A stretch of DNA of 64,000 bases from Bugula neritina (GCA_964035545.1 OZ037772.1:7548889-7612888); one strand, 5' to 3'. Counted from the first letter of the stretch, positions 31,249 to 63,665 are shown. The notes: a model not told the origin generated them from the sequence alone. Made by a program: numbers and translations.

Positions 31249-34200
31249 ATGGAACTTCAAAAATTGCTTAATGTTTATTGCAAGGTGAGTCATACATCTT
31301 CATATTAAGGAATGGACCTTGCTGCTGTATACGAGTCATCATCTCAAAATTGGTGTGCAGATCCAGTTTCTAAAACCTCTACTACTGAAGCTGCTTCAGA
31401 TAATGATTATATTGCTTTTTTATATGTTGCTTGTGGTATTCAGTGACAGAGAATTTGAGTAATTTATTATTTTTCTCCAACAGTTACATATCTGTCATTG
31501 AGCGATTGAGCATGAAGTACTTCCCAATGTAAATTTTGTAAAAATATGAATAAATGAGGTTAAAGACCATGTCAAGTGTGGACACCGAACTTTTGTTAAG
31601 CCTTTTAATTTACTTTCCACAAAGGAGTAGCCATGGTTCAGGTATTAGATCATTTGCCTAGTATAAACACAAAGTCATGGGTCCGAACCTGGACAAAAGC
31701 CATTAGTGATGTTAAGAAGAGCATCCAGTCATAATTGCTCCTGTGCCTCATTTAAATAAGTCCTTAGCCCGCTTTTCCAAAAACCCTTTCCATTAAAGGT
31801 TCCCGCGAGGATAGTGACTACACACTTGCGTGAGCTTGTAAGTTATTCTCCATGGCAATAAAAAAAGCTAAAATTCTTCGACTGATCAGTTCTTTGCATA
31901 CTGTTTATCAAACATATTTTATTGAGTTTGTATTAACACCTAACATACAAGACTCTTGTGGACTAGATTATTAATAATATAGTAAAACTCACACTTTAAC
32001 TTTTGCATCTGCTCAGCTAATATTTAAGAATTAGGGGAAATGGAACATCACCAATAGTTAAAACTAAACAAGAGTGTCTTACAATGATGCCATTCTTTCA
32101 ACAAATTGACCTATAATGTAAAGGTCAAATATTAAGGTCTAATGTAAAAGTTAAATTTTAAGAAACTATAAAAGAGCTTATCACATTTGATTTGAAAAAT
32201 AAATAGCAGTTTGAAGTATAAAGATGCAAACCTTATTGTTGATTACCAGGCAAACATGATAGTTTCATCTATATATAGTAAACTCTAAGTAACCTGTTAC
32301 ATGGGAACTTATGATCATAGGACACAATCATGCTCACAAGACAAAAAACTATTGTATTCTAATTAGTATGCTGATTTAAAAATACCAAAATACTATAACT
32401 TTTGTCATATGTCTGGGTGCACAGTTTAATGCCAAAGAACATATCTTTAATTCAATAATACCTTCTAAACACAATAACTGTTGGAAATATTTGCTGCATT
32501 TTTAAAATAATTTTGCTTTTCTAGAATAAAAAAACATTAGAAATATTAAAATAACAAGGTCTAAACAACTTTTGTTACGAAGTGGAAGAAATGCTACTGT
32601 CACACTCTACTACACTAGTAAGCGCAGTAAATTATATACGTTGTCATCAAAAGAAATCATGAGTATTTGTCAAAAAATGTTTAATAATTACAAAGCATTA
32701 TTGTTATAAATTTCCTGTAATATAGGAAGTGTGATTAGTAATAAATATGTGTAAAATATGTTGTTAAAGGATTGCTCTATCTTGTCTAATAAATGGCCAT
32801 TTAGGTCAAACACACATAATATTGTGTTTTTCTAAGCATGCATTGACAAAAAGCATTTGACCAAAGGTAGAAAAAGTTAGTTGAAGTTGAGGGTGTAGAT
32901 TGGTAACAGCCAAAACGCCGATTTTGAAATGAGCTGGGAAATGTGACGTAACAGCGCCAGCATTCCTGCTGGTCACGTGACTATACAAATGAATAACTAT
33001 AGAAATATGACTGTGAGATGTGATCTTTCAGCTCGTAATTTGTATATTTATAGAAGTGTAAATGTGAATTATCTCAATCTATAGTTTTTTGACATTTTAA
33101 ATAACATGTATGTGATAACATTAGGCCATATTTTGCTTGTAAACATAAAAAAAAGCATTGCAAAAACATGCATTCTTTAGGATGAATGCCTGCGATCGAT
33201 CTAAACTAGGTCAGATTGTGCAATATTACGGGCGCACCAAAGCTGACCTATATAGCGCACTGTAACTGCTTGAGCGTTATTGGTTGATGTTGCGCTCAGC
33301 AACCTTGAATACTAGCGTTATAGTTAGCACGTGCAGCATAGTTACTGGCGTTCACTCGTCACGTATTAGGCTATTCTTTTTCATGGCTGAAAATTTTACC
33401 TCCCTCAAAATTGGAATTTTGAAAAGCTGTTTTCTAGGCATATATCCCTTTGCAAAGTCACAATTGTTTGCATACACATTAGATTATAGTTCATAATTAT
33501 AATGTGATTGTAATAAACTAAGATAGAGCAATCCTTTAAGGGTAGTGCTGAGAGTTACCAGTAATCTTTGTAGAAGTCTTGAGTTAAAATCTAAGCAGGG
33601 CTGTCATTTCTTTTATACATGTAGGAATCTGCTAAGTAAATAATTTAATGCCCAATGGTACTCCTTAACCAATTTACTAGAACTGAAAAAGTAAAATAAA
33701 TGTAAAGTAAAAAGATTAAATAGATTTCTGCGATACTTTGAATTTGTATTTTTTTTATACCGGTATGTTTTAGATTTTTATGCATGGTAGCTGTTGTTGC
33801 ATTTCATACTGTATAATTATTACTTTCTAGGTTTTGGCTATTATATTATTAAAGCTGAGTAGCGGAACAGTGATATTCTCTAGTGACGTTGCAGGGTATG
33901 TTTCTGACCAGTAGTTACTATTCTCACCTCACCTATCTCTGCTTTGTCTTGTTTGGGTAGTGGGTTGACCAATAGTTACTATGATATGTTTCAACTGCAA
34001 ATCACAAACGCACACACGCACACACGCACACACGCACACAAACACACACAGGCACACACGCACACAGGCACAGACACACGCACGCACGCACGCACGCACG
34101 CACACACACAGACACATGTATATATAAATATGTAAGCATTCTTATAGTAACATAGTAAAACTTCTAATTTTCAGATTACGATTTAAAAGTCTGTCTCGCC

Positions 34201-36869
34201 AAAATTCTGAAAGGCAATTGAAGGGCACATACAGGTACCTTGCCACAGACACATTTATTCCAGGAAATTTTCTCGTTGTCATAGGAGATGCTCTTTACAC
34301 AACTACCAATTTCCAAGATAGACATCTGATAGCTGGAAATTCTCAAGAGTCTGGATACGTGGACGGTGCTGGCAGAAACTCGAAGTTTAACTCCATATCT
34401 GGAATAATACAGGCTCCGGATGACCCCAACTCAGTATGGATATCTGACTATTCTAACAACTGTATAAGGATTTTATATCGCCTTTGGAACACAACAAGTT
34501 ATTTGACGGGCAAGTGCTTGGAGAATCACGCACGAGATGGTGATTTTAAAAATGCAGGCATTGGCCAACCTTTTGAACTGCTTCTAGACACAAATAGAAA
34601 AGTCTATTTTTATGACAACACAGCATTAACAATCAGATGTTTGATATTGCAAAATTCAGTATGGAAAGTGAAGACTCTATATTCTTTTGGCCACCATGTT
34701 ATTGGGCTGGGATTGAACCCATCTGGATTATTAATGTATATCTCTCACTCAATGGGTGTCACTCAAGTTTGCTTAGTGTGCGGCAATCTGGAATCTCTGC
34801 TCATAGTGAAAAAAAGTCAAAAACATAATGACGGAGATTTAGAGTACTCAGCAGTGAAATCAGTCGAGCACTTCTTGTTTCTTGACAACTACAACTTCCT
34901 GTTAGCTGATACGGGAAATAACGTGATTCGAGTTGTCAATCTTAGAGACTCAACAATAAGCAGTCTATGTCGGCCACAGTCTTCATATACAATCACCGAA
35001 CAATCTGGAGGTATCACCACTTGCAAATTAAAATTTCCCATACATCTAGTGAATGCTGAACACCTCAACCGTGTCATTGTTTTGGGCTTTGACAGTTTTT
35101 ACATACTCAACTATGGTGAGAATATTATAACACCAAATTGCATATAACTAACTTTAGAGGATTTTTGAAAACTAAGTGCAAAAGCAAGTTATATAAATTT
35201 TGTTACAATTCATTTCCCACTTAGCTTGTATACTTATATAGTGATTGAGCTTTTTAACTCTGATTATAAACTCACACTGCTTGCACTATGCAAAATTCGT
35301 GACTCCTATATAGTCACTTGGGATTTTTGGCTTGAGAATCTTGCACATATTTAAATAAGTAAAAACATAAGTTTCTACTACTGCCAAATTGCAGACCATG
35401 GTACTCTGTTTTGTGTTAATGAAGGGATTAACCCTGAAACGGCTGCTGTACATAATTTAAAGTATATAACATAATTGTATTGAAAATACGAGGAGTATAT
35501 GAGTTGTTTTCTCAATGAGAAATATATTAATAATAATGAGATGAGGGCAATTAGCATCTGTCAGTGTTGACATTGCATAGCATCTTTAGTGCTGGTGTCT
35601 TGTATGTCTAGCCATTGGACTCTTGGTGTTGTTATCTGAGTCAAATGTCGGTCTGGTATTAATGTTTTGCCTCCATTCTGCACAATCATAAGAGAGTGTG
35701 GTAAAGCTGCTGAGAATATTTTGAACTGCATCTTTTTCAGATATTATCAGTCAACTGACCAAGCCCAAGCCTTTGACAACTGTAACCAGAACTACTACAA
35801 CTACAACCAGAAAAGATACAAAAACATCAACTAAATCAACAGATAGATCAACATCACCAAATATAACATCCACTTTTTCCATTTTCTCCGACCAATATTT
35901 CTTGCTGATTTTAGCAGCTCTTGCATCTCTAGGCTTTCTCACTCTGGTACTCATCGTTCTGGTAGCAGTGATGACGTTTACTAACTGTTCCGAAAAGCGT
36001 AGAAGTATGTTTTTGCACACTTTTGATGCTCATTTATATTACTTAGACTTGTGGAAAAATGTTGCTATATATTATAGTTCCGTTTTATCGTAGTACCATG
36101 CGGTGTAATGTCATTCACAGGCAATGGTTACTGCATATAATTTTATCGTATCAATCCTTCAATCAGACGGAATATTGTTGATGAAATTATTACCAGTTGA
36201 TAAATCAGTTTTCATTATTTTCATTATTTCTCAACTTTCTTAGCCATACCTGAGTTAAATTTTATACTTAAATGTCAAATAGAAGTAAGTTTTTTGACAG
36301 AAAACATGTTGAATGAGTTTATAGATGAAGTATTGAAAATGAAAATCCAAGTCTAGTTTTGTTGACGAAACTATAAATGAAAGATTTTTTTAAAAAAATT
36401 AGCGATATATTTTAACCTACTTTAACCTGCTTCAACTATCAATTTTTTTTCGTGGATATCTTAGTTTTTAGTTAAAGTTTATTTTAAAAATTTAAAATGT
36501 TCTGATAAAAATATATAACAGCATATTGAAATTATTAAGCTAATTAGTTTTTTAATGATTGAGTTGCAAAATTAGGGAAACCTGAATTTTTACTTGTATT
36601 TTTTAGTGAATTGTACTTTAACTCTCTAAAAAGATGTTTTTGTATTTCAATTATGTTTAAACATTTTACGATCATAAAATCCACAGCTCTAACGTGATTT
36701 AAACTAGATGCGTTTAATCATTTGTTTAGATTCCAAGGACAGAAAAGTCACCCTGACTTTTAACATGTCTGTAAGTTCATCCACATTGGATCTCATACAT
36801 TCGTCAACTGTTGGGAAGTCGTACACAGGCACTCCTATGACTGAAACTTACTACAAAATATCTTCATAG
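31249..36869 (+). CDS. NHL-repeat beta-propeller type I membrane protein, copy 1, about 481 aa (exons 31249-31284, 33831-33895, 34175-35115, 35741-36004, 36730-36869)
   Basis: Exon phases join (0,2,1,1). Signal-like [24 protein letters not shown]; NHL motifs IAG..SGYVDG...[31 protein letters not shown]; Thr-rich stalk; [28 protein letters not shown]; Ser/Thr/Tyr tail. First exon is the least certain. Confidence 0.8.
31624..31834 (+). mobile_element. tRNA-derived SINE, copy 2 (intron 1 of NHL copy 1)
   Basis: Colinear with 9703-9914. Confidence 0.8.
34007..34117. repeat. (CA)/(CACG) microsatellite
   Basis: Directly visible. Confidence 0.9.
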
Positions 36870-37299
36870 TACCTCCACTTACTTCTCATCTGTAAATAAA
36901 AGATACTGTTCTAATTGTGTTATCTCTCACCTTATTCTGTCCAAACAGACACCAACTACAAAATATATCTGTAAAACTTCTGCTTCTTATTCATCTGTAA
37001 ATAATGAACTCTCTTTCATTCACTCATCTTTTCTGAGCGGACAGTAACTACAAAATATCTAGTTATTCATCTGTATATAATATAAGATACTGTTTAAACC
37101 TGCATAAATCTCTTATATATTGCACAGAGAGTAGCATGATTATCAACCGTTATGACATTTTCTACTTAGCTGTCACTGTATATAAAATATATACTGCTAA
37201 ATCTGTATTGTGTCTTATCTGTTATCAATCTGTATAAAAACACTGCTGCTTATGTCCCAGACAATTCTGTAGCACTCCCTGTTTCTCATCTATCTGTAC

Positions 37300-37465
37300 A
37301 GAGAGTAGAACTACTATTGATCTGCTATAACAGATGTAGCTGAAGTAATGAGAGAGAAGTTTAAATCTAAACAATGTTTTTACTTATGTTACTCTGTCAA
37401 TAAAAACAGCAAGCAGATTTTCATTGTAAATAGATACAGCAAACAGATTTACGTTGATATTTTGC
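37300..37465 (+). pseudogene. Decayed relic of the last caspase exon, downstream of the NHL copy 1 stop codon
   Basis: ACAGATGTAGCTGAAGTAATGAGAGA...ACTTATGTTACTCTGTCAATAAAAACAGC aligns with 3748-3830 and 28672-28755 (TDVAGIMRD...LCYTVDRNSQPIF); contains a stop. Confidence 0.78.
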
Positions 37466-40400
37466 TGATTAAAATTAGCTCTTATTATTTAATTCATGTT
37501 TACTGATTATGCAATATTAAAATATCTATAGTTTAGAAATAAAAATTGACTTTACCTTTTTCTATTTGATTTGTTTTTGCTGCAGCAGAATTTTTCAAAT
37601 CGATTTTTTTTTTCTTAAATAATCATTTCAACTTTTAACATTAATAAAAACAAAGTAATTGCTACAATTGCAACATCAGCATGATATTGTTAATAATATT
37701 TTACTTTTTATGTCATTATTTCTGTTAAAATTTTCTCAACGAGTAAAACTTTTTATGGAAACCCTATTGCTAGATTCTTATAAGATGCAACTAATAATAA
37801 GTGCTATTTGCATCTCAACAATATAGCTTTGTTGGTAAGAAAAAACATTAACAATTGATTGTGTAAATGAGTGAAATACTTGTTACCTTTGATTTTTATA
37901 TATTTCCCTTTTTATAAGAAACTATCATTAGAGAATGTGATTTAAGTTTTCTTGTTTTGTAAAAGTTTAAAAGACAGTAACAGACTTGTAATGTTATCAC
38001 CATTGAATCTAGTAAGCAAAGTACAATATTATTTTTGTAATGATGATTGAAGTTCCAAATGATTTGCTTTAAGTAAATAGTATCTCCTTTTGAATGTACA
38101 CTGTAACAAGCAAAGTTTACAAAAAAAAACAACCTATCAATTTTAAATATAAAATAACCATGGTTCTGCTATCAATAATTTGAAGAAAGTATTTTTGTAA
38201 AAGGCAAAATAATTTTCACTAGATAAATGGTTGGAGAAAATGATATTCCACTTGTTTCAAAACATTTTCAATTTTTCTAAAAATGACAATTTTTTGGGCA
38301 TCAAAGACAATAGAATTAGGTGTACGTTACTTGATAAGAACTATAAAATAAAATCTAGATATTTTAATTTATTACTTTTTTATATGCAATGCATTACTTT
38401 GTATAGTTAGACAAGTATGTACATATGTGTGCAAACATAGTTCAAGAAAGATTTGAGAACACATATTTATGTCTTTCCAGATCACAGTTATTATATCATT
38501 GGATGCCAGTTATGGTGAAGTAAGTTTTCTTGATGAAGTAGGAGGGTAAGGTTTATACTCGACGAGAAAGCCACAATCTTTTGAAAATCTCACCTCTAAC
38601 AAACAATAGACAACTTAAAATTAGCTAATAACTATAATGCTTAAAATTGCTTATTGCAATTGCAAACAATACCGGAAGTGTATAACACTAAAAAAATAGT
38701 GTAGCGACTTAAAAAATTTCAGATTTCTATAACATTTTTCCAAGCTTTTATTCATTTCAACTCTTTTTCATCTAATAAGTAAAATTTACTCTATATCAGC
38801 TTCTCAATGCTTTGCATTACTTGTTGAAATAGCACTAAATATTTATAAATATATAATGCAATAATATTTCTTTCGTTGTAATAATTAAATTAGTATATAT
38901 GACTTCAGAGTTGGTTAAAATGTTACCCCAGTCCGCAAATCTCAAATACTTAGCGAAAAGATTGGAAATTATCAAATGTTTTCAACTAAAATTTTAAAAG
39001 TCTAAAAAGCTATTACTGTGCTATAAAAATATTTTTAGTACTCAAACTTAATTACAAATTGCAAATAATATGTTTGCATAAATTCAATCAGATGTTTGTA
39101 TCTGATTTGCAAATTTTTAAGATGACATTTTTCAAAGGTGATCTTATATGCCTTTTGACTCTTTTGATATATCTAATTTAGATGTAATTTTAATTCAATA
39201 GAGCAGCTAACTTAAGTAAAGTAATTTACTAGAATTTTGTCAACACTTTCTTTGATAAGTTAAACATTATGTCTATTATTTTCTTGGTTTGCTTCAATCA
39301 TTTGGATTTTTCCAAGGTTCAAAGGCACTGCATGAAAAGGAACTTTAAGTTTCGAACAAACTGCAGTTTATTATATTAGATTATGTATGAAAATCTAAGA
39401 CTGAATTTGTATTTGACTCCTTGAAAACAGTGAAGCTGTGAATGATTGTTGACAGATTTCAATTTATGAAAATTTATAAAACATCTAAATTTATTGCTCA
39501 GTATATAGTGGTATGCAATAAATGACTGTCGAAGTAAAAAAGTTCAGTCGACTTTTTTGTTTACTGAAATTTGTTAACTCTTTTTTCAATTGCAAAAGCT
39601 GCATAATAGTAAAATATGATTTATTTTATGTTCATTGAGAGTTTAAAGAATCTGAAAAAATTAGCAGTTTAACTCAGGCTAAAACTGTTGATAAGTGCCC
39701 AGTAGGCCTTTTTATTAATCCAAATGATTTTTTGACTAACATCTCAAAGGTAAAAACTCACACCTTTGAATCAGTTAAACAAAGACAAACAGAGATCTCC
39801 AATTACAACAATTTGTGAAATATTTTATTATTTTAGATTAAAATTTGAAAACGTATCATTGAAATATGTTGTCAACAGAACAAGTATCTCTTCACCGAAT
39901 ACCTACAGATACATTACAGTAGACTCATATGTTCCAGGAAACTTTCTCATTGTCAAAGGAAACGCTCTTTATACAACGGATTTTCAAAGTACGACTCTCG
40001 TTGTTGGACAGGAGCAAGGGTTTGGTTTTAGGAACAGCGTAAGAGGCAAAGCAAGGTTTCATTCTATTACGGGAGTTATCTCCTCTCCTGTTGAGTCGCA
40101 CTCAGTATGGGTAGCAGACTACCTAAACGGCTGCATCAGAAAAATCAACCGTGCTAAAAACCAAGTGAGTGAGTTGACAGGGGGCTGTCTACAGTATATC
40201 TATTATCCTATACCACTATAAAAGTCGTAGAGAACTTCGGGTCAATCAGTGGTAATGGGATTTGTATTACATTATATAGATTTCGTCAACGATCCTAGCC
40301 TAATGAGGCGCAATTGAAATAAGTAATTGATTGGCTGGAGGTACAACCAGTTCAACTTCATTGGTTAGGCAACGATCGTAACAACTAAAACAAGTGGTGG

Positions 40401-42385
40401 ATACAGTTAGGGTTGACATTAAAACACGGCAATTTCTAGCAGTAATTTGCATTCTAAATCAATTTTTTCATGCAAAAGGTTTTAGAAGCTAGGAGTTATG
40501 AGAAAGAATAATATAATGTAATAATTTTGATTGAAAAGTTTTAACAAATGCAGGTCTGAATTTTTATTTAAATCCGCTCCTTTTAGACTTTGTTCTGAAC
40601 AAAGGATATTAAATACTGTAGCTATTAGATAAGAATTTAGTCTTGTAAGTATTTTGAAAGCATAATTGTCTTCTCACTCAATTTCAGCTCATATTATAAA
40701 TTTATCAATCTTCATTATAAAGACATAATTGTCTTCTCATTAAATAATAGTCTATTACAACTTTATTGCTACCATAATATAATATCATTTTGTAAAATGT
40801 TTTTATTTTCATAGCATTTTTTGCTTAGTATTATAAAATTTTATGCTGCATTGTATATAGCCTACATATGCATATAATGAGCTGCATGTAGTAGACGAAA
40901 AGAAATATCGCAATTATATAAAAGATGTAGAAATTATTTGTAGAATATAAACAAATGCAAAATAATTTAACAAACATATAACTTTACGAACCTCAGCATT
41001 TAAATTTAGTTTGCGGCAAGAATAATTTTTTGCTTGTAAAAAATTAAGTAAAAGATACCAACAATTTTGTTTCTTGTTTTTAATGTTATATTTGTTAACA
41101 TTGTAGATGTGCCTGTATTACACTATATTGAGTTCTGATTATTTTGGTTTAACATTGTAAATAACATATTGTGCAGTATATACAAAATGAGCACATATAT
41201 AAAACATATACTCATAGTGAAAGTATAAGTTCTAATTTTTTTTGCAAATTCATGCATATACTATTTGAAATATATGCATACAACTTGGTGTTTCTGATTT
41301 GTACATGAACAATTTTATTGCTAAATGCTAAGTAATTATTTAAATTTTTCTACAACAAATTCGTCGACATGTTTTATATACCATCTTTTAGCAAACACTT
41401 GCAACACTCCTATGCAATTACATATAACTGTAGCTATAGTAAGCTGTTCATAAAATAGCAACTATTATGAGTGCTGCATTTTTACACACACACTCACACA
41501 CGCACACACACATGAAGAAAAGCAAGCATATAGTTTACTGTCATGAGTTACTTGCAAAAATAAGTTGAAATATATGTTGAAGACTTCATACATTAATACA
41601 AATGGTATACTCTCAGACAGAGGAGCGATTTAGTGCACATGCTCTTAGGAGTTGCATTATCACCTTCTTTCTTGGTGTCATCAAAAATATGGCATTGAAA
41701 GAAGACAATCACTGCTTTGTGGTTTACATATTTGTATTCCTTTTAAAACGTAGTTGAAAAATATATATACATATTTTCTAACTTGAAAAAATGCTCTATG
41801 TAGCTGCTTATATTTTAAAAGAAATTTTAGGTAGCAAAAGTAAGGAATTTTTGACATATTTACTGCAGGGGTGTGATAAACAAATGGACATAACATGCTT
41901 GTTTTAAAGCTAAAATATGATGTAACAGAATTAAAATATATATATATATGCCTATATACATAATGAATGTCATTTCACTATATAACAAGAAGAAATAGGC
42001 TGCTATTTTTACACTTCTGTGCAGTAATTTAAAAGCTTTGATAGCTTAACCTTCTTCATCTGGATAACAAATTTTAGCGTGGGGTGCGGTTAATAAAAAT
42101 GTAATCACAAGAACATGTACATAACTTAATTTCTCCATTATTGCACCAACTATCAATATTTACTTAATAACTAAACCCTATATTTAGCCCAGTGTTCAGT
42201 ATCTAACTAATATGTATGTACTATATACACTGTCCACCTGTTGAGTGTTATTTAAAAAGTGAAAGAAATTCTACAACTATAGTCATATTTGACCCATCAC
42301 TATTATTACACATATCAATGTGTAAAATTAGTAAAAATAATTTAGTGGAAGTATTTGACAAGAATGCAAGATTGCAAAAAATTTA

Positions 42386-42460
42386 GCTGACTGCGAGGAT
42401 TGAACCCATACCCAACGAGTGCAAAGGAAACGCGGTTTACCACGAAGCCAATGCATCATC
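42386..42460 (-). mobile_element. tRNA-like sequence (probable SINE head or pseudo-tRNA) nested in the transposon
   Basis: Minus strand has TGGCTTCGTGGTAA (A box) and GGTTCAATCC (B box) at tRNA spacing, but poor acceptor-stem pairing. Confidence 0.5.
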
Positions 42461-52330: not shown

Positions 52331-52402
52331 CATTATGACCATCAATGTATCACTGTGAATGTAATAATTTTTATATAAGTAAATTAATTTACTATTAAAT
52401 AA

Positions 52403-52531
52403 AACTTGTGCAAGTTTATAGTTGGCATCCCTGTGAGAAACCCCTGATGGGAAAGGTTTTTTGTTAAATGGGGCTAAGCAATTATTTGGTTGGAGCATAG
52501 GAGTAATTATGACTGGATGCTTTTCCTAACA
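52403..52531 (-). mobile_element. 5'-truncated copy of the tRNA-derived SINE, nested in the transposon
   Basis: Reverse complement of the 3' body of 9703-9914 (CCCTGTGAGAAACCCCTGAT...TTATGACTGGATGCTTTTCCTAAC). Confidence 0.78.
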
Positions 52532-54125: not shown

Positions 54126-55914
54126 TTAAATGTTTGAGCAGAAAAAGTAAAAATAAATATTTTGCAGTGTGTTTACTGTTTTGATGATGGTTTTAGGAAA
54201 ACATCTAAATTTACCATTCATGTACTTGTGACAGGCCTGTGTTTCAGCGATTATAGGAGAGTATAATTTTTCTTTAATAGAAATTGAGTCATGCAAGGGA
54301 AGCTGGTTTCCTTACTTTATTAAGCAAAATTTGCTATCACAACAACAGAAGTGTTGCTAGCCTTGATTTGGAAACATTTTATATTTATAACTCTGAAGCC
54401 TATTTTGAGACATTTGGCTGCATGTTGGATAGATTGCATAGCATCTTTACTTGCGCTAATACTTAGAAGCATTTACTTGGTTTTCCTATAGTTTTATTTT
54501 GAATGTTTTTATGATATATTGCAGAACTGTGGGTTCATTCTACTTGTAAGTATATTCCATAGGTCTAACTCAAACCCTGTGAATTTTCAAGTTAATATGG
54601 CAAGCTATGATGAAAGAAATGCTAAACTAGACAGGTAATAGAAAAGAAAGTCCGATAATTTTTTTAATTGTAATTTAAATTACTTAGCTTGCATTACTCA
54701 ACAGTATGGTAGCAGTGGTAGAACCAGCAGCAGCAGCAGCAGGAGTAGATTATAGTATAGTAGTATTGATAAAATGATTGATAGATTAGAACTGTAATTT
54801 TGAATATTAAAAATATGACAATGCCACTGTGCGCCATAAATTTCTTGTTGGCCATTAAAATCAGCCATTAAATCAGTTTTCTTTTGGCTAGAACAAGCAC
54901 TGCTGCCTGGACATAGTAATATATTATATGTATGGACTGTATGTTAATTATATGTAGAGGAATTATTTTTGCTAGCTTTAATAAAAAACCCTGCTCGTTT
55001 CTCATATTATTGTATTGTCAGTTTCAGCAATTTCAGGCCAGATAAATTTAAATTATACCTTGCAAATTTTAGGCCTGTTCCAGTCTACCTGTCAACACAT
55101 TTGTTTGATCTAATCTAATTATGATGGCCTTCCAAGCAATGTAGTTAGCAAAAGTGAGAGAACTAATATTGCTTTTTCAGCCTATATTATGTTTGAAACC
55201 AGTAAAATAATAGAAATCATGAAACTAGTAATAGGCAATCCTATAATGCTGTTTAATAAACTTATTTGCGCTGTTACTTTAGTGATTTCGACGCTGTTTT
55301 ATAAATTATTAGCAATCTTTTAAAAATGAATAAATATACATTTTCTTTTAGTATGTCACCAATTGGAATATTTTGACCTGTATACCTATCTAGTGGAGGT
55401 GTTAATTTGTAAACATATTGGTTTTACCAAGATCAGTGATTAAAGCAGTTGCTGAAAGCCAAAATAAAATGCTAACTAAAGTTCATATCTAGTGGGCTAC
55501 AATTTGCCAACTTCTATAAAGCATATAATAGCTAGTAATTGTTTCTATGCTGTACCACTTGACGGTCTGTTCTCTTTTACCTTACTCTATATTATGCTGT
55601 ATAAATTCTAGCACACCTATCTGGTTTTTAATCATTTCTTGCACCATATGCCAATAATTTTTACGTAGATGCATACAATCGGACAGCTGGATAGCCTGGC
55701 TATTGTGGAGAAGCATCATAACCACCTGCTTGGTGTTAGAGCTGAGTGCATATCAAGGTGGGTAGCACAACTTCTTAGTTCATAAGTAGCAGCGTAGCTT
55801 TTTAAAAGGTTTGACTATATTAAAATATAAACATTTTGTTATTGCACTAATACAATGATAAAAATATGAGCAAACAGTTTCCAATATAACTTGCTGCTGG
55901 TAAGATTTACAGTA

Positions 55915-56145
55915 TTTGTAGTAGAAACAATATTAGTAGTGGTAAAAGTAGTAGTAGCAGTAGTAGTAGTAGCAGTAGTAGTAGTAGCAGCAGTAGTAGC
56001 AGTAGTAGAAGTAGTAGCAGCAGCAGCAGTAGTAGAAGTAGTAGTAGCAGTAGCAGTAGCACTAGTAGTAGTAGTAGTAGCAGTAGCAGTAGTATAGTAG
56101 TAGAAGTAATAATAATAAAATAATAGAATTATTAGTAGTAGTGGT
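55915..56145. repeat. (AGT/AGC)n trinucleotide microsatellite
   Basis: Directly visible; explains the poly-T/A and poly-V ORFs. Confidence 0.92.
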
Positions 56146-59100
56146 GAAGTTGTTTTTGGTTCTGACGTTAGTACTGTTAGCGGTAGAGATGGTGTTGGTA
56201 GAAATAGGATTAGTGGTTGTGCACTCATAGTTGAAGGCATAAAGCATAAACCAGAATTGAATACATATATAACATAGATATGATATGACTTCTTATTTAT
56301 ATTGATTTACTATCTTGCATGAACATGGCATTTTCGCTATCAACATTAGTGTTTGTATTATACACTTTCACTAAACAAGCTTGTTAAATTTATAAAAAAT
56401 TATGTAGGTGATGACTGTTGCATATCTGTGTTTAATTTTGAAAATATCATGTTGCATAATTATTTTTTAGGTGTCTGGTGAGCGGACGACTTCATTTTCG
56501 GCTGCTTCATGGCACCTTTATTTTCGGAAAAGATGTAACCACTTGTAAAATCAGTTTTTTTATGGTGAACTTAACAATATAATGTTTAACAAAATTCTTT
56601 CTTGGTTAAAAATAAAGGTATACCGTCTTTGGCTTTCTGTTATTTCTATATTGTGTTCTTCTGTTGCTATGTGTAATTGATGAGATGACTCCAAACTCTT
56701 GCACATCCGCCACAATAAAGTATATAATTTTGCTATGGGCATCAAGATTTTGTTATAAGTAGATATAGTTTTGCAATGATAGTGTTGATGCTGCAGCAGG
56801 TAACATTCTAGTAGGATAAACCAAACAGAATTTAAGCTAAAACATTCTAAAAAAATACAGCATCGCTTGAGCCACCTTGCCTTCTCTCTTTTCTAGGCAA
56901 AAGTTGTTAGCTAAATAAGGAAAAGACAAATTAATGATTTCTGTGAGAGTTGTCTACTACAAAAATTACGTAGCAGATCATCATTAGTAACCATAACAAC
57001 ACGTACATGTTTACAGCACTCATGTGCTCTCTTTGTTCTGATTCGTCAACAGTAGCGCCCTAGACAGTCGATGTTATCGCACGAAAATATATTGTTTATT
57101 GCGGCTAATATCGCGAAATGGCAAAATGAGGATCGACCCTGACAGTCGTAAAAGCCGTGTGATGCACTGGCTGTCTAACAAATGACGTCTTAGATGGAAA
57201 TTTTACAGACGCTGGAATAGGATATCCACTCGAATTAATTTTTGGCACAAGTGAAACCATTTACTTTGCAGACAACAAATCATTGACAGTTAGACGTCTG
57301 TGCTTAGAGAATGGGGTCTGGAAAGTTAAAACTTTGTTCACTACCGACAAATTTGCTCTGGCACTCGCCTTAAGCCCATCTAAAGAGTTCATGTATATTT
57401 CTCACGCAGAAGGTCTCAATAGGTATTGTATGGTATGTAAGGATGCAGAAACTTTACTGATAGTTGAGACTAATGGAACTCACAATGATGGCGACTTACA
57501 GCTCTCAACTACAAGTCCTATTGAACACATTCTATTTATAGACAATGAAAACTTCCTGTTAGCCGACACAGATAATCACGTGATTCGGGTAGTTGAACTG
57601 AGAAAGTCTCGGATTAGCACTTTGTGTCAACCCCAATCTTCTCCCCTGCTTGCCGAGAAAGCTGGGGACATCAGAAACTGTGTACTAAGATTTCCTATAC
57701 ACCTGCTGAATATAAAAGATATCAAAGTCATTTTTATTTTAGGCCTTGACAGCTATTACTTTCTCCGTTACAGTAAGGCTTAACTTATTTTCTCAAAATT
57801 GTCAAACCAAAATTTTTTTTAAAAAAAGTAACCCTTTCTTGCTTGTTTTGATTAACAACTCTGCATATTACATATCTAGTTGAGTTAAAAATCATTTTGG
57901 TCTAGTATAAAAAATGCATATGCTAATTTTATCATTTTCCAGCAGTAAAAAAATTCTTTATCTATCTTGTGTTTATAGTTTTTAAACTAGTTTAGACACT
58001 GACACTCTTCAAGTAGTTACAAAACTAGTACTTGTGTACTTAAGATACATCACCATACTTTTTATATTTGCTAGACACCAATGGGAAGGCAGCAGATTAT
58101 TCGTTGTACCCACCGATTATTAAATCGAAAGCCTCTACTAAAACGACAAGCGAAAGATATACAACAACTCCAGATCTAGAAATAAATCTAACCGTAAATA
58201 GAGAACTTGCAACCCAAGCAAGTAATCCAAATGCAATAAAACCATCATCAACTAGAATTCCAAAAACAACAAAATTCTGGCAAACTCTAGCAGTCATGAT
58301 AGTTTTGGGTTTATTCACTTTAGCTCTTATGATTGTGATATTTTTAGTTGTTCTAGAATATACTTGATACTTTTCTTGTTTTCTGGTTGATTTGAACTCT
58401 ATACTCTATTTCTAACAGGCAACCCTTTTCTATTAGACTTTTGTATTATATGGTAACATATGGTATAATTACAAATTTAGAATTGATTGGCTAAATAGTA
58501 ATACACTGTGTATTTTACTTTGTCTTTGCTACACTACTAGTGTAGTATATGTGATACTTTTAAAATAAACGCAATTGTTTTATTGTATTATTTGTCTATA
58601 CGAATACTGTAAGTATTAGTTATTTGATAAAAACTAAATGTAAATATTAGATTAAATCTAGTCTTTCAAACTTAGAAACTTCAATTTTGAATATATAAAT
58701 TATAAACAGCTTTTAACTTAAACACTGAAGTTTCTGTGTAGGCCGACATCTAATAATTTAGTATCAACATTTTTTTTATTTAATAAATGGAAGTATTTTG
58801 TAATAGCATTTTTTAACATTTAATTATTGGGGTTGAACATCAAATACTAAAATTTCAATCAAACAAGTTGTTATAATAGACAATATTGAATGTTGATTCT
58901 TCATGAGTGATTAGCAATAAAAACGCAAACCTTCAAAAACTATGGTACTGATAGCAGTAAGATTGTTTGTACAGAAATCATCATCATGATAAGACTATGT
59001 ATTAAATGCAACTTTACTGCTACACGTATATACAAGGTTAACACAAAACGCTATCTCCTACTTGTAAACGCACAGCACCTTACAGAAAACTAATATCGCT

Positions 59101-59609
59101 CATTGAAATACACTATATATACTCTTGATGCTTCATGAAGTCTACAAAAGATAAATAAGTGCTGAAATATGCATAAATACATTTTATGAAATAAAAAAGG
59201 GTTTTTCTTTCTGAAGTATTTTGTGAAAATTAAATTCAGCAGAAATATTAACAACTTTTTATAATATCATCAGCAAAAAAGATGCTTAAAAATTGTGAAT
59301 TTATTAGTCATTTATTCTTATAGTTTTTTTATTTTGTGAATTTAAAGTTGTTTTACTTACGCAATTGAAATAGTATATGCAATTCATGTATATAAACTTT
59401 TTTAAGTAAAAATAATTATAATTTTTTTGGAGAAATATTTTTAGTGCACACAGACTTGTAAACAAAATGAATCAACATTCTTATGACACGCTGTCACACT
59501 AAAATGTTCAACAATTGATGGTTTGCAGAAATTATTTTCATAATTACATTTATTGTATAGTAGAACGGGAAACTAACCTCACAATTAGCAGCATTCAGAG
59601 GACCTAATC

Positions 59610-62600
59610 ATGATACTTTCTGTAACTGTTGTAAGTAACTGGTAACATAACTCCAAGTCAAATATTTATTTCTCATTTCTCAGTATAGTATCTTTTTGAA
59701 ATGTTATCTACCACCACCTATCTAATGTAATCTCTGCAATATCATGTATAATTACAACATTCACTTCACAAAGGAGCAGTCGTGGTCTAGGGGTTAGAGC
59801 GTTTGCCTAGGAAACACAAGTTCACATGGGTTCAAGCCTAGACAAAGGTCATACATTTGTGATGTTAGGAAGAGCATTTAGTCATAATTGTTTTTTGCCT
59901 CATTCAAATAAGTCCTTATGTGAAACCCTTTTTATTAGGAGTTTCTCACAGGGATAGTGACTATAAACTTGTGTGAGTTTTTTTCTAGGTGTAAATTTTT
60001 ATTATAATAATGAATGTGCAGCTTATATATTATAATCTAAGCTTATTTTAATATATTATATAGTAACTATAGGATATGAGTACATGAGCCTTTTTTGAAA
60101 AAAAACACAGGCTATGTGTGCGTGTGTGCGTGTGTGCGTGTGTGCGTGTGTGCGTGTGAGCGTGTGTGCGTGTGTGCGTGTGTGCGTGTGTGCGTGTGTG
60201 CGTGTGTGCGTGTGAGCGTGTGTGCGTGTGTGCGTGTGTGCGTGTGTGCGTGTGTGCGTGTGTGCGTGTGTGCGTGTGTGCGTGTGTGCGTGTGTGCGTG
60301 TGTGCGTGTGTGTGTGTGTTGTAGAAAGTACATTAGCAAAATAAAATCTAAATTAAAAACTTGCTGATGTCAAAAACGATTGAGATTGTCACTCACGTTG
60401 CTTTCATTCTTTTTTATAGATTTTCTTGACTTCAAGCTTGGCATTTGCTAGAGTAGAGTACAAAGAAGATGTAGCAGAGTAAGATATAATCTAATAAAAC
60501 TTGTTATTGCTATGTATGTTAAAGCCTATGTATTAGGGGGCAGCTGTGGTTTAGAGGTTAAAGTTTTTGCCTAGTAAACAGGTCATAGGTTTGAGCCCTG
60601 ACAATGGCCATAAGTGTTGTTGAAAATATTAGCATCCAATCAAAATTGCTCATATGCCGCATCTGAATAATTCCTCAGCTTGATTTAACAAAAACTCTTC
60701 CATCGAGGTTTCATTACAGGAATGGTGAACACAAACTTTCGCGATTGAGTATGTAGTCTAGGTATTGCAAATTGCAGATATGCTACTTGGCACATCTTTT
60801 TCAAGTATTGCAATTCAAGTTCCTTACATCAGTATGCATGTTAGTAACAAATAGTATGGCATGTTTTCTCTTCTACTACTGTGTACTCTATCTATACCTA
60901 CATCAAGTCGTGTTTGTAGTACTTGAAACAAAGCATCTAAATTCAGTCTATACTTGAAGCAAGTAGTATTTTAAAATCATATTCATAATACGTAATGCAC
61001 ATAACTCAGGTCATATTATTAGTATTTGATATGTGTATCTCATGTCATGTTTATGGTACGTGATCATGTACTCACCTCAAGTCATTTCAAGTTTCTTACG
61101 GTGATGTAATATATTACTTTTCTTGAGTGCTATTCACTCATCATTTCTTACCTCAATTAACTGTGCTATGTGCAGACATAATTTTAAGTGCATAACCAGT
61201 GAAAAATAATATCTATCAAATTGTTTATATGAAGAACAGGAGAACAAAATTACAAAATGCATAGCATGTGACTATAGTAAGAAAAGACAACTGCAAGTTA
61301 CAACAACTGTTTGCTTTTTTTCAGCTTAAAATTTGAAAGAGTAAACTTTGAAGGAAACGCCAGCGAAGCAAACGTTTCGGAAGATGTCTTTTTCAGAAGT
61401 ATTGCAGAAGACGCATATATTCCGGGAAATTATCTTGTATCTAAAGGATTTGCTTTGTACACAACTAAAGATCTGAATGAGGCTACCTTAATTGCTGGTC
61501 GGTTGGTAGACATGGGATATCAAGAAGGGATAGGAAGTGATGCTAGGTTTGGGGAAATTCTTGGAATAGTAGCATCCCCGACGAGCCGACAGACAACTTG
61601 GATAGCGGATTTCACCAACCATTGCATTCGTTGGATTGACCGCCAAACCAACATGGTGAATCATTTAACTGGAATGTGCGAAAATGATGAAAAAAAAGAT
61701 GGAAACTTTGATGAAGCCCGATTAAACACACCTTTGGAACTAGTTGCAGTAACAAGCTCTAAGATATATTTTACTAGTGGCCAAGAATATGCAATAAAGT
61801 GTTTGTGTAGTGAGAGCAATGTTTGGATAGTTAAGACTCTATACAACTTTGAAAAAAGAATCATTGGCTTTGCGTTGAATCCTTCTCAATCCATGGTATA
61901 TATATTACATAGAAAAGGAGTGGGCAGAATCAACAAATGGTTCAACGCTAAGAGCTATCAAGTAATTGTAAATGATTATCGCTATCACACTGATGGACGG
62001 CTTGAAGCAGCCAGCGTCAACTTTGTCTCAGGCATTCACTTCTTCGACGATAACAATTTTCTTTTAGCCGAAGCATACCTTCACGATCTCCGGGTAGTCC
62101 AACTTAGAAAATCTAGAATTTCTTCTATTTGCATACTTCAACCTCCAGAACTACCAGAAAAACTGAGCTCTGGTCGCATTAATGAATGCCACATAAGATT
62201 TCCAAGAAAGTTTGCAAGAGTTGCTGAAGATTCCAATAAAATAAGAATCATAGGATTAAGAAATCACTACAGCTTGGAATTTGGTTTGTATTCAATAATA
62301 TATAGTTATATATATTGCAACTTTTTAAGTCTTTTTAATTCTTTTGTTAGTAAAATGAAAAACAAGTGAAATTTCTATTTTACAACAAATGAAAGTAGCG
62401 GAACTATTTTACCAATTTCTGTTTTCATCTTTGGAATCTAAATTGACTAACAACATTAGATAACATTTTACCATCAAAAAAATTAGGAGACTTATGAGCA
62501 AAATTTTTTTTTCTATTTTTAGTAAATACCACCAAAGTCAAACAATCAGAAACCAAACCTACAACACTAACCACGAGGCAACAAGCAACAAAAGCAACAA

Positions 62601-63419
62601 AAACAACGGAAAAAACAAAAACACCAACAACAACAGAAACAAAAGCAACAACAACAACAGAAACAAAAACAACAACATATAGAAAGACAATAAAACCAAA
62701 CTCAAAAAAGAAACCAGAAATTGAAGTGACCACCAAAGTAAAGCCTGTGGAAACTGTTAGGCCATCTAATACCACAGACGACGTCGTGCTTGTTGTTACA
62801 CTTGAAGCGTTAGCCTTTTTGCTCATCTTTGTTCTGATCACCCTTGTGCTAAAATACTTTGACAATAAACCAAGTAAGTTTGAAAGCTTTTGATCAAACT
62901 TAGAGAATTAAAATTTTGCGCATCATTTAATAAATTTCTAAGAAGCTGCTTCCTTTTGATACACAAATCATGCTAAAAAACAATATTTGGTTTGAACATT
63001 TATCACTGTATCTATTTTTATGCTTACAGGCAGCTGGCTTTTATAGAATTTAAATGCCACAATAGAAATGTGTACACATGCAGTTTTATTCAAATTTAAT
63101 TAATTTTTTTCAAATGTGTACACAGTTTTATTCAAGTTCATGCAATTAATTTTTTTCAAATGTGTACACAGTTTTATTCAAATTTAATTGATTTTTTTAT
63201 ATCTATAAATGTTATTTTATTTTATATTTCAACTGACCATTTCATTCTAATTTGTTATAGCTTTCAAAAATTACTTTTGTAGAAGAGAAATTTGACCTTG
63301 AAGTGCAAGTGCAGTCTTCTGAAATGATGCTTGATAATAATAATGACAACCAGGCCATTGTATCAAACTCTTCTCTGTCTAAAAAAAAGAGACGTATAAG
63401 AAAACCTCAGAATATATAA
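59610..63419 (+). CDS. NHL-repeat beta-propeller type I membrane protein, copy 3, about 508 aa (exons 59610-59630, 60420-60478, 61325-62283, 62523-62873, 63283-63419)
   Basis: Spliced N-terminus [17 protein letters not shown] is a typical signal peptide. NHL motifs IAG...[36 protein letters not shown]; Thr/Lys-rich stalk; [25 protein letters not shown]. Same intron phases as copy 1. An alternative last acceptor at 63261 would give a shorter tail. Confidence 0.82.
59773..59978 (+). mobile_element. tRNA-derived SINE, copy 4
   Basis: Colinear with 9703-9914. Confidence 0.78.
60114..60319. repeat. (GTGTGC/GT)n compound microsatellite
   Basis: Directly visible. Confidence 0.95.
60537..60748 (+). 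mobile_element. tRNA-derived SINE, copy 5 (more diverged)
   Basis: Colinear with 9703-9914 with more substitutions. Confidence 0.7.
63066..63200. repeat. Three tandem copies of a ~45-50-bp intronic unit (AAATGTGTACACAGTTTTATTCAAATTTAATT...)
   Basis: Directly visible. Confidence 0.8.
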
Positions 63420-63665
63420 ACCAACTTCTTACAAAAAAGGATTCTATTTTGGTTAAAACAATCTTGATCTAACTCAGAAAGAGCAGAGGCAGTGAATTAT
63501 CTATTGCCTCGTGCAGCTAGATATGCTAACAGAACAGAAGTGGTAAAATATCTTTGCAGACTACCATTAGTTAAATATGAGCGACTGTTTGCTAAAAACT
63601 CCAAAGGAGTAACAGCATTACAATTAGCATGTGACCTCAAAAGATTACAGCCACATAGCACATAA
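63420..63665 (+). pseudogene. Decayed ankyrin-repeat relic related to the ankyrin-caspase gene, directly after the NHL copy 3 stop codon
   Basis: Translates AARYANRTEVVKYLCRLPLVKYERLFAKNSKGVTALQLA versus AASNGRTDVVEYLCSLPVKDELLFAKDNNGWTALH in copy B. Confidence 0.8.

What the first reader, a model, noticed from the sequence alone, without database searches (positions are those of the whole stretch)
31249..63665. Ankyrin and caspase fossils directly behind NHL receptor tails: possible ancestral NHL-TM-ankyrin-caspase receptor or interleaved receptor/effector pairs
Seen: the predicted terminal exon of NHL copy 3 runs, just past its stop (63419), into decayed ankyrin sequence of the same subtype as the ankyrin-caspase gene. 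The region about 450 bp after the NHL copy 1 stop holds a decayed copy of the last caspase exon. Both relics are on the same strand as the genes. Inference: the two families are linked. Either a transmembrane receptor (NHL propeller, stalk, TM, ankyrins, caspase) split into tail-less receptors or decoys and soluble ankyrin-caspases, or a receptor+effector gene pair was repeatedly duplicated. Copy A, whose 5' end is outside the window, could be an intact fusion.
Basis: partly seen in the sequence, partly recalled or inferred. Interest (0 to 1): 0.88.

Follow-up and report, generated by a model that had tools for sequence, protein, structure and literature searches.

The report
Gene scraps at a duplication junction
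Two short dead fragments of ankyrin-caspase genes do lie just behind two NHL receptor genes, but they are young, neutrally decaying debris from local rearrangements where two gene arrays meet, not remains of an ancestral NHL-ankyrin-caspase receptor.

Summary
Both relics are real. The ankyrin relic is at 63503-63653 and the caspase last-exon relic at 37260-37430, both on the + strand, 84 nt and about 390-430 nt behind the NHL3 and predicted NHL1 stops.

The window is the junction between a tandem array of ankyrin-caspase genes and a giant array of more than 65 NHL-transmembrane genes, in a bugulid bryozoan close to Bugula neritina.

- **Different sources.** The ankyrin relic is sister to copy A's last ankyrin unit. 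The caspase relic is 85-87% identical to a different caspase subfamily.
- **Junction position.** The ankyrin relic lies at the junction of a 5.6-kb tandem duplication (NHL3 to the next NHL gene). A 2.14-kb inversion splits it; undoing the inversion in silico restores both alignments.
- **Young and unconstrained.** Relic versus copy A has dS about 0.5, while NHL1 versus NHL3 has dS above 2. The relic drifts at intron rate.
- **Unique.** None of 20 further NHL genes has a relic, and no NHL relic lies among the caspase genes.
- **Copy A is no fusion.** It has its own ATG-initiated ankyrin exon and no NHL upstream.

One lead stays open. At C8 8.69-8.73 Mb an NHL exon lies about 3 kb upstream of an ankyrin-caspase gene on the same strand. 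I could not read that sequence.

The parts
1600..3876 (+). Caspase exons c1-c4 of ankyrin-caspase copy A. Its ankyrin exon lies upstream of the window at -4792..-542.
   Evidence: tblastn and exon profiles; Pfam PF00656 on c2, 31.6 bits; upstream ORF with its own ATG
18120..25478 (+). Single-exon ankyrin array of copy B (2452-aa ORF made of 72-aa units)
   Evidence: ORF list; Pfam Ank families
26606..28800 (+). Caspase exons of copy B: c1 26606-26956, c2 27278-27487 (ILSHG), c3 27860-28102 (SYCRGG), c4 about 28468-28800
   Evidence: Splice sites read directly; Pfam PF00656 at 29.8 bits on c2
34128..35147 (+). NHL propeller exon of NHL copy 1
   Evidence: NHL profile E 2.3e-118; PDB profile hit to NHLRC2
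35773..36093 (+). Thr-rich stalk and transmembrane exon of NHL copy 1
   Evidence: ORF translation
36658..36750 (+). 93-nt piece (end of an intron, acceptor and start of the predicted NHL1 terminal exon 36729-36869). Its only other copy in the genome is at 65547-65638 (-), beside the second ankyrin piece.
   Evidence: blastn 80.6%; genome-wide DNA search finds only these two copies; ORF end at 36867-36869
36934..36983 (+). 50-nt piece of the NHL1 3' flank, also copied into the junction filler behind NHL3
   Evidence: blastn 80% over 50 nt, E 6e-6, on the un-inverted model
37260..37430 (+). Relic of caspase last exon c4. It covers residues 44-97 of about 104, carries two 2-nt insertions, and has no 3'UTR or poly(A). 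It belongs to subfamily II, not to the four neighbouring genes.
   Evidence: Own-genome DNA search: 83-87% to C8:7353926, 7355398, 8702833, 8691446, C9:390260 and C4:18600442, against 75-77% to the neighbours
39829..40194 (+). First part (profile positions 1-123) of the NHL copy 2 propeller exon
   Evidence: NHL profile E 1e-34
40195..57171 (.). About 17-kb insertion that splits the NHL copy 2 exon cleanly, with duplicated GGCTGTCTA at both ends. No Pfam hit in its ORFs.
   Evidence: Junction sequences; profile positions 1-123 and 121-317 on either side; Pfam blank
57172..57771 (+). Second part (profile positions 121-317) of the NHL copy 2 propeller exon
   Evidence: NHL profile E 9.9e-61
57864..63436 (+). 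Unit of the tandem duplication: NHL2 intron end, TM exon (58068-58367), tail, intergenic DNA and all of NHL3. Its copy lies beyond the window and ends with the NHL gene at 68588-70903.
   Evidence: blastn colinearity; NHL3 versus NHL68588 dS 0.45
61311..62290 (+). NHL propeller exon of NHL copy 3, under purifying selection (dN/dS 0.15 against L021)
62525..62876 (+). Stalk and transmembrane exon of NHL copy 3
   Evidence: Sequence read; 88% identity to L021
63283..63419 (+). Terminal (cytoplasmic tail) exon of NHL copy 3, with TAA stop at 63417-63419
   Evidence: Splice phase and conservation of the stop in L021/L022 with an in-frame indel
63503..63653 (+). Ankyrin relic, piece 1, equal to copy A -1424..-1273. 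Piece 2 (copy A -1255..-1166) lies at 65684-65779 on the minus strand, outside the window.
63657..64000 (-). Start of the 2.14-kb inverted block (63657-65797). It holds an inverted copy of the NHL2-type TM exon and tail (matching 59163 to 57864), the two NHL1-flank pieces and ankyrin piece 2.
   Evidence: blastn 75% over 1344 nt; tblastn of the NHL2 TM exon at 64446-64742 (-); in-silico un-inversion restores both alignments; the same junction is present in L021/L022

Best explanation
The window is the seam between two tandem gene arrays on one chromosome of a bugulid bryozoan. On one side are ankyrin-array caspase genes; on the other are single-pass NHL-propeller surface protein genes. The two relics are short non-functional fragments (about 170 and 245 nt) of two different ankyrin-caspase paralogues, left at the first genes of the NHL array by local rearrangements.

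What is shown for the ankyrin fragment:
- A 5.6-kb unit (57864-63436: NHL2 tail, intergenic DNA, NHL3) was duplicated in tandem. This produced the next NHL gene at 68588.
- Between the two copies lies about 1 kb of filler. It is a mosaic of 245 nt copied from the last ankyrin unit of the copy-A lineage, two shuffled scraps (50 and 93 nt) of the NHL1 3' flank, and about 600 nt of unknown origin.
- A 2.14-kb inversion later cut the ankyrin fragment in two.
- All of this predates the split from the lineage of contigs L021/L022. Since then the fragment has drifted at the neutral rate.

Inferred: the mosaic arose by template switching or fragment capture during repair.

The caspase fragment behind NHL1 is an internal piece of the last exon of another subfamily, whose intact members sit at C8 7.354/7.355 Mb, C8 8.69/8.70 Mb, C9 and C4. 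It is either a similar captured scrap or the last remnant of a resident gene of that subfamily that has been deleted.

Neither relic encodes anything, and neither marks a former domain of the NHL proteins.
For: 1. Array layout. Four tandem ankyrin-caspase genes lie at -38 kb to +28.8 kb, and 22 NHL exons lie from 34 kb to 212 kb. Genome-wide lists agree.

2. Uniqueness. Profile scans of 264 kb find exactly one c4 relic and one ankyrin relic, no c1-c3 relics, and no NHL relic on the caspase side. The ankyrin relic's only DNA relative in the 216-Mb genome is copy A.

3. Junction and inversion. The homology map and the un-inverted model give single continuous alignments across both breakpoints: copy A -1424..-1188 at 74% over 245 nt (E 4e-39), and 57864-59446 at 73% over 1652 nt. 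The NHL1-flank scraps lie in between.

4. Age.
- Relic versus copy A: dS 0.50.
- NHL3 versus NHL68588: dS 0.45.
- Window versus L021: dS 0.39.
- NHL1 versus NHL3: dS 2.2.
- NHL1 versus NHL2: saturated.

5. Placement. The relic is 70-73% identical to copy A. Copy A is 63-65% identical to B, m1 and m2, and the relic is 57-63% identical to those three. The motif TDPNKTE is shared only with copy A.

6. No constraint. Relic identity between the two lineages is 82%, with 2-nt and 4-nt indels, like introns at 78-82%. The NHL exon is 89% identical with no gaps. dN/dS is 0.61 for the relic against 0.15 for the NHL exon.

7. Different sources. The c4 relic is 83-87% identical to subfamily II genes and 75-77% to the neighbours. 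The ankyrin relic is copy-A-like; the corresponding subfamily II unit is only 43% identical to copy A at the protein level.

8. The c4 relic has no poly(A) or 3'UTR homology.
Against: - Two independent ankyrin-caspase scraps both lie within 0.1-0.45 kb behind an NHL stop on the gene strand. That is more orderly than random debris would predict (rough chance about 1%). Only the ankyrin one has a mechanical reason, namely the duplication boundary.
- The c4 relic is about equally similar (83-87%) to six subfamily II genes. This fits a lost resident paralogue as well as a copied scrap.
- At C8 8.71 Mb an NHL exon lies about 3 kb upstream of a subfamily II ankyrin-caspase gene on the same strand. 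This is the same order as NHL1 followed by the c4 relic.
- About 600 nt of the filler has no identified source.
- No RNA data exist, so use of the relics in transcripts is untested.
- The NHL1 terminal exon is only predicted.
Confidence: 0.68

Rival explanations
1. Interleaved partner genes. Ankyrin-caspase genes once sat directly downstream of NHL1 (a subfamily II gene) and NHL3 (a sister of copy A), as receptor/effector neighbours. Large deletions later removed them and left only the two relics.
For: - Both relics are on the gene strand close behind NHL stops.
- The c4 relic is roughly equidistant (83-87%) from six subfamily II genes, as a separate paralogue would be.
- A second locus has NHL (-) at 8711625-8712578, then an ankyrin ORF (-) at about 8706.6-8708.6 kb, then c2 and c4.
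- Caspase and NHL clusters are adjacent at two of about 13 caspase loci.
Against: - The ankyrin relic sits inside mosaic filler between the two copies of a tandem duplication, next to shuffled scraps of the NHL1 flank. That does not look like decay in place.
- There are no c1-c3 or further ankyrin remains.
- Twenty other NHL genes have no relic, and no NHL relic lies between caspase genes.
- NHL1 is not specially related to the NHL at 8.7117 Mb (37% identity, against 51% to NHL2).
Confidence: 0.2
2. Ancestral single-chain receptor. An NHL-stalk-TM-ankyrin-caspase protein was the ancestor of both families, and the relics are the decayed cytoplasmic part of NHL1 and NHL3.
For: In this genome the ankyrin relic is in the same frame as the NHL3 tail exon, with two stops between. 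Both relics are on the gene strand.
Against: - The relic is sister to copy A and only dS about 0.5 from it, while the NHL paralogues are saturated.
- In L021 the relic is in another frame.
- The relics belong to different subfamilies.
- Ankyrin exons start with a conserved ATG N-terminus preceded by stops.
- Copy A has no NHL upstream.
- No protein of 507-4291 aa with an NHL Pfam domain appeared among database relatives of the post-ankyrin region. This is weak evidence, because few bryozoan gene models are in the database.
Confidence: 0.03
3. Functional non-coding use. The relics survive because they act within the NHL 3'UTRs or flanks, for example as antisense or small-RNA cross-talk with ankyrin-caspase mRNAs, or as alternative terminal exons.
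For: - The relic and its junction are retained in two lineages.
- Both lineages keep an open frame of 62-70 codons over the relic, because the two indels sum to 6 nt.
- The stretch between the stop and the relic is 88% conserved.
Against: - Relic identity of 82% equals intron identity.
- dN/dS of 0.61 rests on 22 changes and is compatible with neutrality.
- 78% identity to copy A is too low for small-RNA targeting.
- No RNA data exist.
Confidence: 0.05

Closest known systems
Filler DNA and templated insertions at segmental-duplication and inversion junctions (replication template switching of the FoSTeS/MMBIR type, or fragment capture during end joining).
   Same: Short fragments of 50-250 nt, copied from nearby loci within tens of kb, sit in shuffled order and orientation exactly between the two copies of a tandem duplication. 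A small inversion accompanies them.
   Different: The event is old (shared by two lineages), so microhomologies at the joints can no longer be read. About 600 nt of filler has no identified template. The mechanism is inferred, not shown.
Unprocessed gene-fragment pseudogenes in tandem arrays (by-products of unequal crossing-over in immune-type multigene families)
   Same: The relics are truncated, frame-shifted and stop-containing, evolve neutrally, and lie at the edge of two expanding arrays.
   Different: Each relic is only a part of one exon, not a truncated gene. The two come from different subfamilies.
Processed (retro-copied) pseudogenes
   Same: The c4 relic comes from the last coding exon, as 5'-truncated retrocopies do.
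   Different: There is no 3'UTR homology, no poly(A) tract and no visible target-site duplication. Homology stops before the stop codon. The ankyrin relic is internal to a long exon. The retrocopy reading is rejected.
Genetically linked receptor/executor pairs (for example plant paired NLRs or fungal het loci; recalled from general knowledge)
   Same: A diversified surface-receptor array lies beside an array of repeat-sensor proteases, and this occurs at two loci on one chromosome.
   Different: There is no evidence of one-to-one pairing, shared promoters, co-expression or interaction. The arrays abut rather than interleave.

Membership tests
Caspase (peptidase C14) - identity of the source genes | Match to the C14 profile over the p20 core | tested here: met
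   Exon c2 of copies A and B scores 31.6 and 29.8 bits against PF00656, cutoff 21.4. Database relatives from Bugula neritina are named 'Caspase family p20 domain-containing'.
Caspase (peptidase C14) - identity of the source genes | Catalytic His (SHG) and Cys (QACxG) motifs | tested here: met
   ILSHG is in c2 and LSYCRGG in c3, so the Cys-Arg-Gly is kept while the two residues before Cys are non-canonical. Activity was not tested.
NHL-repeat six-bladed beta-propeller | Profile similarity to solved NHL propellers and to the Pfam NHL repeat | tested here: met
   A profile of 16 paralogues matches NHLRC2 (6g7w) at E 2.5e-21 and SOQ1 at E 1e-19. Pfam PF01436 is hit by 9 of 16 members, best E 6.7e-6. 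No single ORF reached Pfam at the E cutoffs used: 0.1 for five window exons, 1 for the trimmed NHL3 exon. The fold was not modelled.
   Copy A and the other three ankyrin exons start at a conserved ATG with upstream stops. No NHL lies in the 50 kb upstream of the window. The relic's frame differs between lineages. The one untested candidate is C8 8.706-8.713 Mb.
   Relic versus copy A has dS 0.50, against dS above 2 for NHL1 versus NHL3. The relic nests with copy A inside the caspase array.
Repeatedly duplicated receptor+effector gene pair | Alternation of the two families, or relics of one beside most members of the other | tested here: not met
   There is one ankyrin relic and one c4 relic for 22 NHL exons, and no NHL relic among four caspase genes in 264 kb. 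The unread part of the array (7.763-8.03 Mb) shows no c4, c2 or post-ankyrin hits in the genome-wide searches.
Tandem-duplication junction with filler plus inversion | Colinear duplicate units, foreign fragments exactly between them, and both inversion breakpoints healed by un-inversion | tested here: met
   The same junction is present in L021/L022.
Processed retro-pseudogene | 3'UTR and poly(A) tail behind the copied exon, and no introns | tested here: not met
   Alignment of the c4 relic with L023 shows that homology ends before the stop codon, with no A-tract.

The most novel reading that the evidence does not exclude
The NHL surface-receptor arrays and the ankyrin-caspase arrays are kept together as a functional recognition/execution supergene, for example for allorecognition or immunity in a colonial bryozoan. 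On this reading the relics are traces of a formerly interleaved arrangement. The locus at C8 8.706-8.713 Mb, where an NHL exon lies about 3 kb upstream of an ankyrin-caspase gene on the same strand, would then preserve an intact receptor-effector pair or even a co-transcribed or fused gene.
Probability: 0.1. Interest if true: 0.75.

Novelty: already known. Interest (0 to 1): 0.25.

Why it matters
The result removes an attractive but wrong reading. A transmembrane NHL-ankyrin-caspase receptor would have been a new kind of one-chain surface sensor coupled to a death protease.

The seam between the two arrays is instead a clear, datable example of how tandem immune-type arrays grow. A 5.6-kb duplication with mosaic filler, a later small inversion and a clean 17-kb insertion into an exon all lie within 30 kb.

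What remains of wider interest is the double adjacency of the two expanded families on one chromosome. That is a testable lead for a receptor/effector relationship in a phylum with almost no functional immunology.

Tried and rejected
- **RNA evidence.** The one run search found no RNA run. X1 is DNA of the same organism, with contiguous coverage that includes intergenic DNA. X2 and X3 hold only a high-copy repeat at 59773-59984.
- **More genome letters.** I did not try to obtain them by another route. The array beyond 7.763 Mb and the 8.69-8.73 Mb locus were therefore studied by coordinates only.
- **A collapsed pseudogene behind NHL1.** A weak blastn hit of 36437-36552 to the intron just after the ankyrin exon of A and B turned out to be AT-rich low-complexity similarity. 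I rejected it.
- **c1-c3 remains.** Targeted profile tests for c1-c3 remains around the 93-nt piece gave negative scores.
- **Subfamily II c1-c3 peptides.** These found nothing on the NHL side of the 264 kb.
- **Retrocopy origin of the c4 relic.** Rejected.
- **Search for fused proteins.** The NHL profile search of 1.84 billion representatives was swamped by giant multi-NHL proteins. Family members there are single-exon ORFs of 270-400 aa.
  - The NHL3 exon found only one relative.
  - Relatives of the post-ankyrin region showed no NHL domain.
- **Pair duplication between the two loci.** NHL1 is not specially close to the NHL at 8.7117 Mb.
- **Transposon identity of the 17-kb insertion.** Pfam gave nothing on its nine longest non-repetitive ORFs.
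- **Literature.** Two searches found nothing on NHL/caspase linkage in bryozoans.

Full report
**Setting.** The window is G000:C8:7548889-7612888 of a 216-Mb eukaryotic assembly with about 32% GC. The best named database relatives of its ankyrin-caspase genes are Bugula neritina proteins (EB796_001182, EB796_014620, 'Caspase family p20 domain-containing'). The orthologue of EB796_001182 in this genome is 83-95% identical. The genome is therefore a bugulid bryozoan close to, but not identical with, that B. neritina assembly. I fetched 50 kb upstream and 150 kb downstream (L001-L020) and analysed the joined 264 kb.

**What the genes are.**
- The 'caspase' label holds. Exon c2 of copies A and B matches Pfam PF00656 above threshold. 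The motifs ILSHG and SYCRGG are present.
- The 'NHL' label also holds, but only at profile level. At E cutoffs of 0.1 (five window exons) and 1 (the trimmed NHL3 exon) these ORFs do not reach Pfam. A profile of 16 paralogues matches the NHLRC2 and SOQ1 NHL propellers at E 1e-19 to 2.5e-21. Nine of the 16 paralogues hit Pfam NHL.
- Each NHL gene has one propeller exon of about 320 codons, then a Thr-rich stalk/TM exon, then short tail exon(s).
- For NHL3 the splice phases (CCAA|GTAAGT ... TTTTGTAG|AAGAG) and the related contigs L021/L022 fix the stop at 63417-63419.

**Layout.**
- Four ankyrin-caspase genes stand in tandem on the + strand: m2, m1, A and B. Their ankyrin exons lie at -38098..-33308, -20174..-17190, -4792..-530 and 18117..25475.
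- From 34 kb onward come 22 NHL propeller exons in 180 kb.
- Genome-wide, the NHL family forms one array of more than 65 copies at C8 7.583-8.03 Mb, a small cluster at C8 8.71-8.73 Mb, and more distant clusters on C2, C3, C4, C7 and C9.
- This caspase family has about 20 members. Seven lie at C8 7.335-7.578 Mb and two at C8 8.69-8.70 Mb.
- The window is thus the seam between two arrays.

**The observation.** Both relics exist and are highly significant.

| Relic | Protein-level evidence | DNA-level evidence |
|---|---|---|
| Ankyrin, 63503-63653 (+) | 49% over 47 aa; unit profile E 1.9e-9 | 78.3% over 152 nt to copy A, E 2.6e-28 |
| Caspase c4, 37260-37430 (+) | 48-51% over 33 aa to neighbours; exon profile E 2.7e-9; 73% aa to L023 in two shifted pieces | 83.75% over 160 nt to L023, E 4e-44 |

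L023 is a metagenome contig from the related lineage that carries another subfamily of the family.

**Copy A is not a fusion.**
- Its ankyrin ORF (1416 codons, L005 5208-9458) begins MAERTLHNVSN..., homologous to B's MAEKTLHTVSN....
- Stop codons lie two and a few codons upstream of the ATG in both genes.
- Upstream of it are a LINE-type reverse-transcriptase fragment and then the caspase exons of m1.
- The NHL profile finds nothing between -50 kb and +34 kb.

**The relics are unique.**
- I built profiles of exons c1-c4 and of the 72-aa ankyrin unit and ran them with all filters off on every stop-to-stop frame of the 264 kb.
- They find the four intact genes, one c4 relic and one ankyrin relic. 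Nothing is found behind the other 20 NHL genes.
- At the DNA level, the ankyrin relic's only relative in the whole genome is copy A.

**Anatomy behind NHL3.** The homology map reads as follows.

| Interval | Strand | Matches |
|---|---|---|
| 63503-63653 | + | copy A -1424..-1273 |
| 63657-64950 | - | 59163..57864 (NHL2 intron end, TM exon, tail) |
| 65547-65638 | - | 36750..36658 |
| 65684-65779 | - | copy A -1166..-1255 |
| 65853-68096 | + | 59203-61090 (the NHL2-NHL3 spacer) |

- The spacer copy leads to the NHL gene at 68588, which is 71% identical to NHL3.
- Re-inverting 63657-65797 in silico yields one continuous alignment to copy A (-1424..-1188, 245 nt, E 4e-39). It also yields one continuous alignment to 57864-59446 (1652 nt). 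Both cross the former breakpoints. A simple 2.14-kb inversion is therefore demonstrated.
- Before the inversion the order was: NHL3 stop, 84 nt, 245 nt of ankyrin, 50 nt matching 36934-36983, 93 nt matching 36658-36750, about 600 nt of unknown origin, then a second copy of the unit 57864-63436.
- The ankyrin relic is thus part of a mosaic filler at the junction of a tandem duplication.

**Age and source.**

| Comparison | Measure |
|---|---|
| Relic vs copy A (orthologous last ankyrin unit) | 70-73% identity |
| Relic vs B, m1, m2 | 57-63% identity |
| Copy A vs B, m1, m2 | 63-65% identity |
| Relic vs copy A | dS 0.50 |
| NHL3 vs NHL68588 | dS 0.45 |
| Window vs L021 (NHL exon) | dS 0.39 |
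| NHL1 vs NHL3 | dS 2.2 |
| NHL1 vs NHL2 | saturated |

- The motif TDPNKTE is shared only by the relic and copy A.
- The fragment therefore left the copy-A lineage about when the 5.6-kb duplication happened. That is long after the NHL paralogues had separated, and this excludes a vestige of a common ancestor.

**Conservation.**
- L021 and L022 (JGI metagenome contigs, about 80% identical to 60119-64120) carry the same relic and the same relic/inverted-tail joint.
- Between the lineages the NHL exon is 89% identical with no gaps and has dN/dS 0.15.
- Introns and spacer are 76-82% identical. The relic is 82% identical with a 2-nt and a 4-nt indel and has dN/dS 0.61 from 22 changes.
- In L021 the relic is in a different frame from the tail exon. 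It evolves like non-coding DNA.

**The caspase relic has another source.**
- In the own genome it is 83-87% identical to the c4 exons at C8:7353926, 7355398, 8702833, 8691446, C9:390260 and C4:18600442. It is only 75-77% identical to the four neighbours.
- The ankyrin relic, in contrast, is copy-A-like. The corresponding subfamily II unit is only 43% identical to copy A at the protein level.
- The two relics are therefore not the two ends of one decayed gene.
- The c4 relic is an internal 170-nt piece with two 2-nt insertions. It has no 3'UTR and no poly(A), so it is not a retrocopy.
- Its near-equal similarity to six genes leaves two readings open: a captured scrap, or the last remnant of a resident subfamily II gene.

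**What stays open.**
- At C8 8.69-8.73 Mb two subfamily II ankyrin-caspase genes lie on the minus strand. Their c4 exons are at 8691.4 and 8702.8 kb, and their ankyrin ORFs of 672 and 674 codons reach to about 8708.6 kb.
- They are preceded on the same strand by an NHL exon at 8711625-8712578 and followed by five NHL exons on the plus strand.
- That is the same order as NHL1 followed by the c4 relic. However, NHL1 is not specially related to that NHL (37% identity).
- L023, the related-lineage counterpart of the caspase pair, shows caspase followed by ankyrin-caspase, but it does not reach the NHL gene.
- I could not read this locus. It is the one place where a pair or a fusion could still exist.
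- No RNA data are available for this organism in the run index.

**Verdict.**
- The linkage of the families is real as chromosomal adjacency.
- The ancestral-fusion reading is rejected, the repeated-pair reading is unsupported, and copy A is an ordinary ankyrin-caspase gene.
- The relics are best explained as rearrangement debris at the seam of two tandem arrays.
- Other windows of this scan had already noted the two arrays and the 17-kb insertion. None had treated the relics.

Noticed in passing
window 39829-40194, 40195-57171, 57172-57771: NHL 'copy 2' is a single propeller exon split by an insertion of about 17 kb, with GGCTGTCTA duplicated at both ends. The reading frame continues exactly across the insertion (SELTGGCL | TNDVLDGNF). 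Its nine longest non-repetitive ORFs (63-77 codons) give no Pfam hit, so the kind of element is not confirmed.
   Followed up: partly
window 2317-3183 versus 27275-28141, and L005 8560-8859 versus window 24507-24806: Copies A and B are 94% identical across caspase exons c2-c3 including the introns (caspase exon dS 0.09-0.18). Their last ankyrin units have dS 1.1. This looks like recent gene conversion or an exchange of the caspase module between otherwise old paralogues.
   Followed up: partly
G000:C8:8691426-8734788 (outside the window): A second junction of the two families: two ankyrin-caspase genes (-), one NHL exon (-) about 3 kb upstream of the second ankyrin ORF, then five NHL exons (+). 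It is known only from search coordinates.
   Followed up: partly
window 59773-59984 and 60580-60700: A very high-copy short repeat: summed contig depth of 50,000-700,000 in three runs, with many joints and loose ends. Flanking letters such as GGGTTCGAACCC suggest a tRNA-derived SINE.
   Followed up: no
L005 655-1530 (window -9345..-8470): A 291-codon ORF with a reverse-transcriptase-like sequence (…YADDTNLF…) of the non-LTR type lies between ankyrin-caspase genes m1 and A. The call is by eye; no profile search was run.
   Followed up: no
L021, L022, L023 (JGI samples 3300002729 and 3300003318): These metagenome contigs are host bryozoan DNA about 80% identical to this genome. They serve as a second lineage for dating (NHL exon dS 0.39).
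   Followed up: yes
window 36658-36750 and L006 1547-1638 (-): A 93-nt piece occurs only twice in the genome, both times within about 0.5 kb of an ankyrin-caspase relic. At NHL1 it covers the acceptor of the predicted terminal exon. Why it travels with the relics is not explained.
   Followed up: partly
L023 3781-4161 versus 4115-6145: In the related lineage the subfamily II ankyrin exon is called as two overlapping ORFs. This is either a frameshift near 4115-4160 or an assembly error.
   Followed up: no
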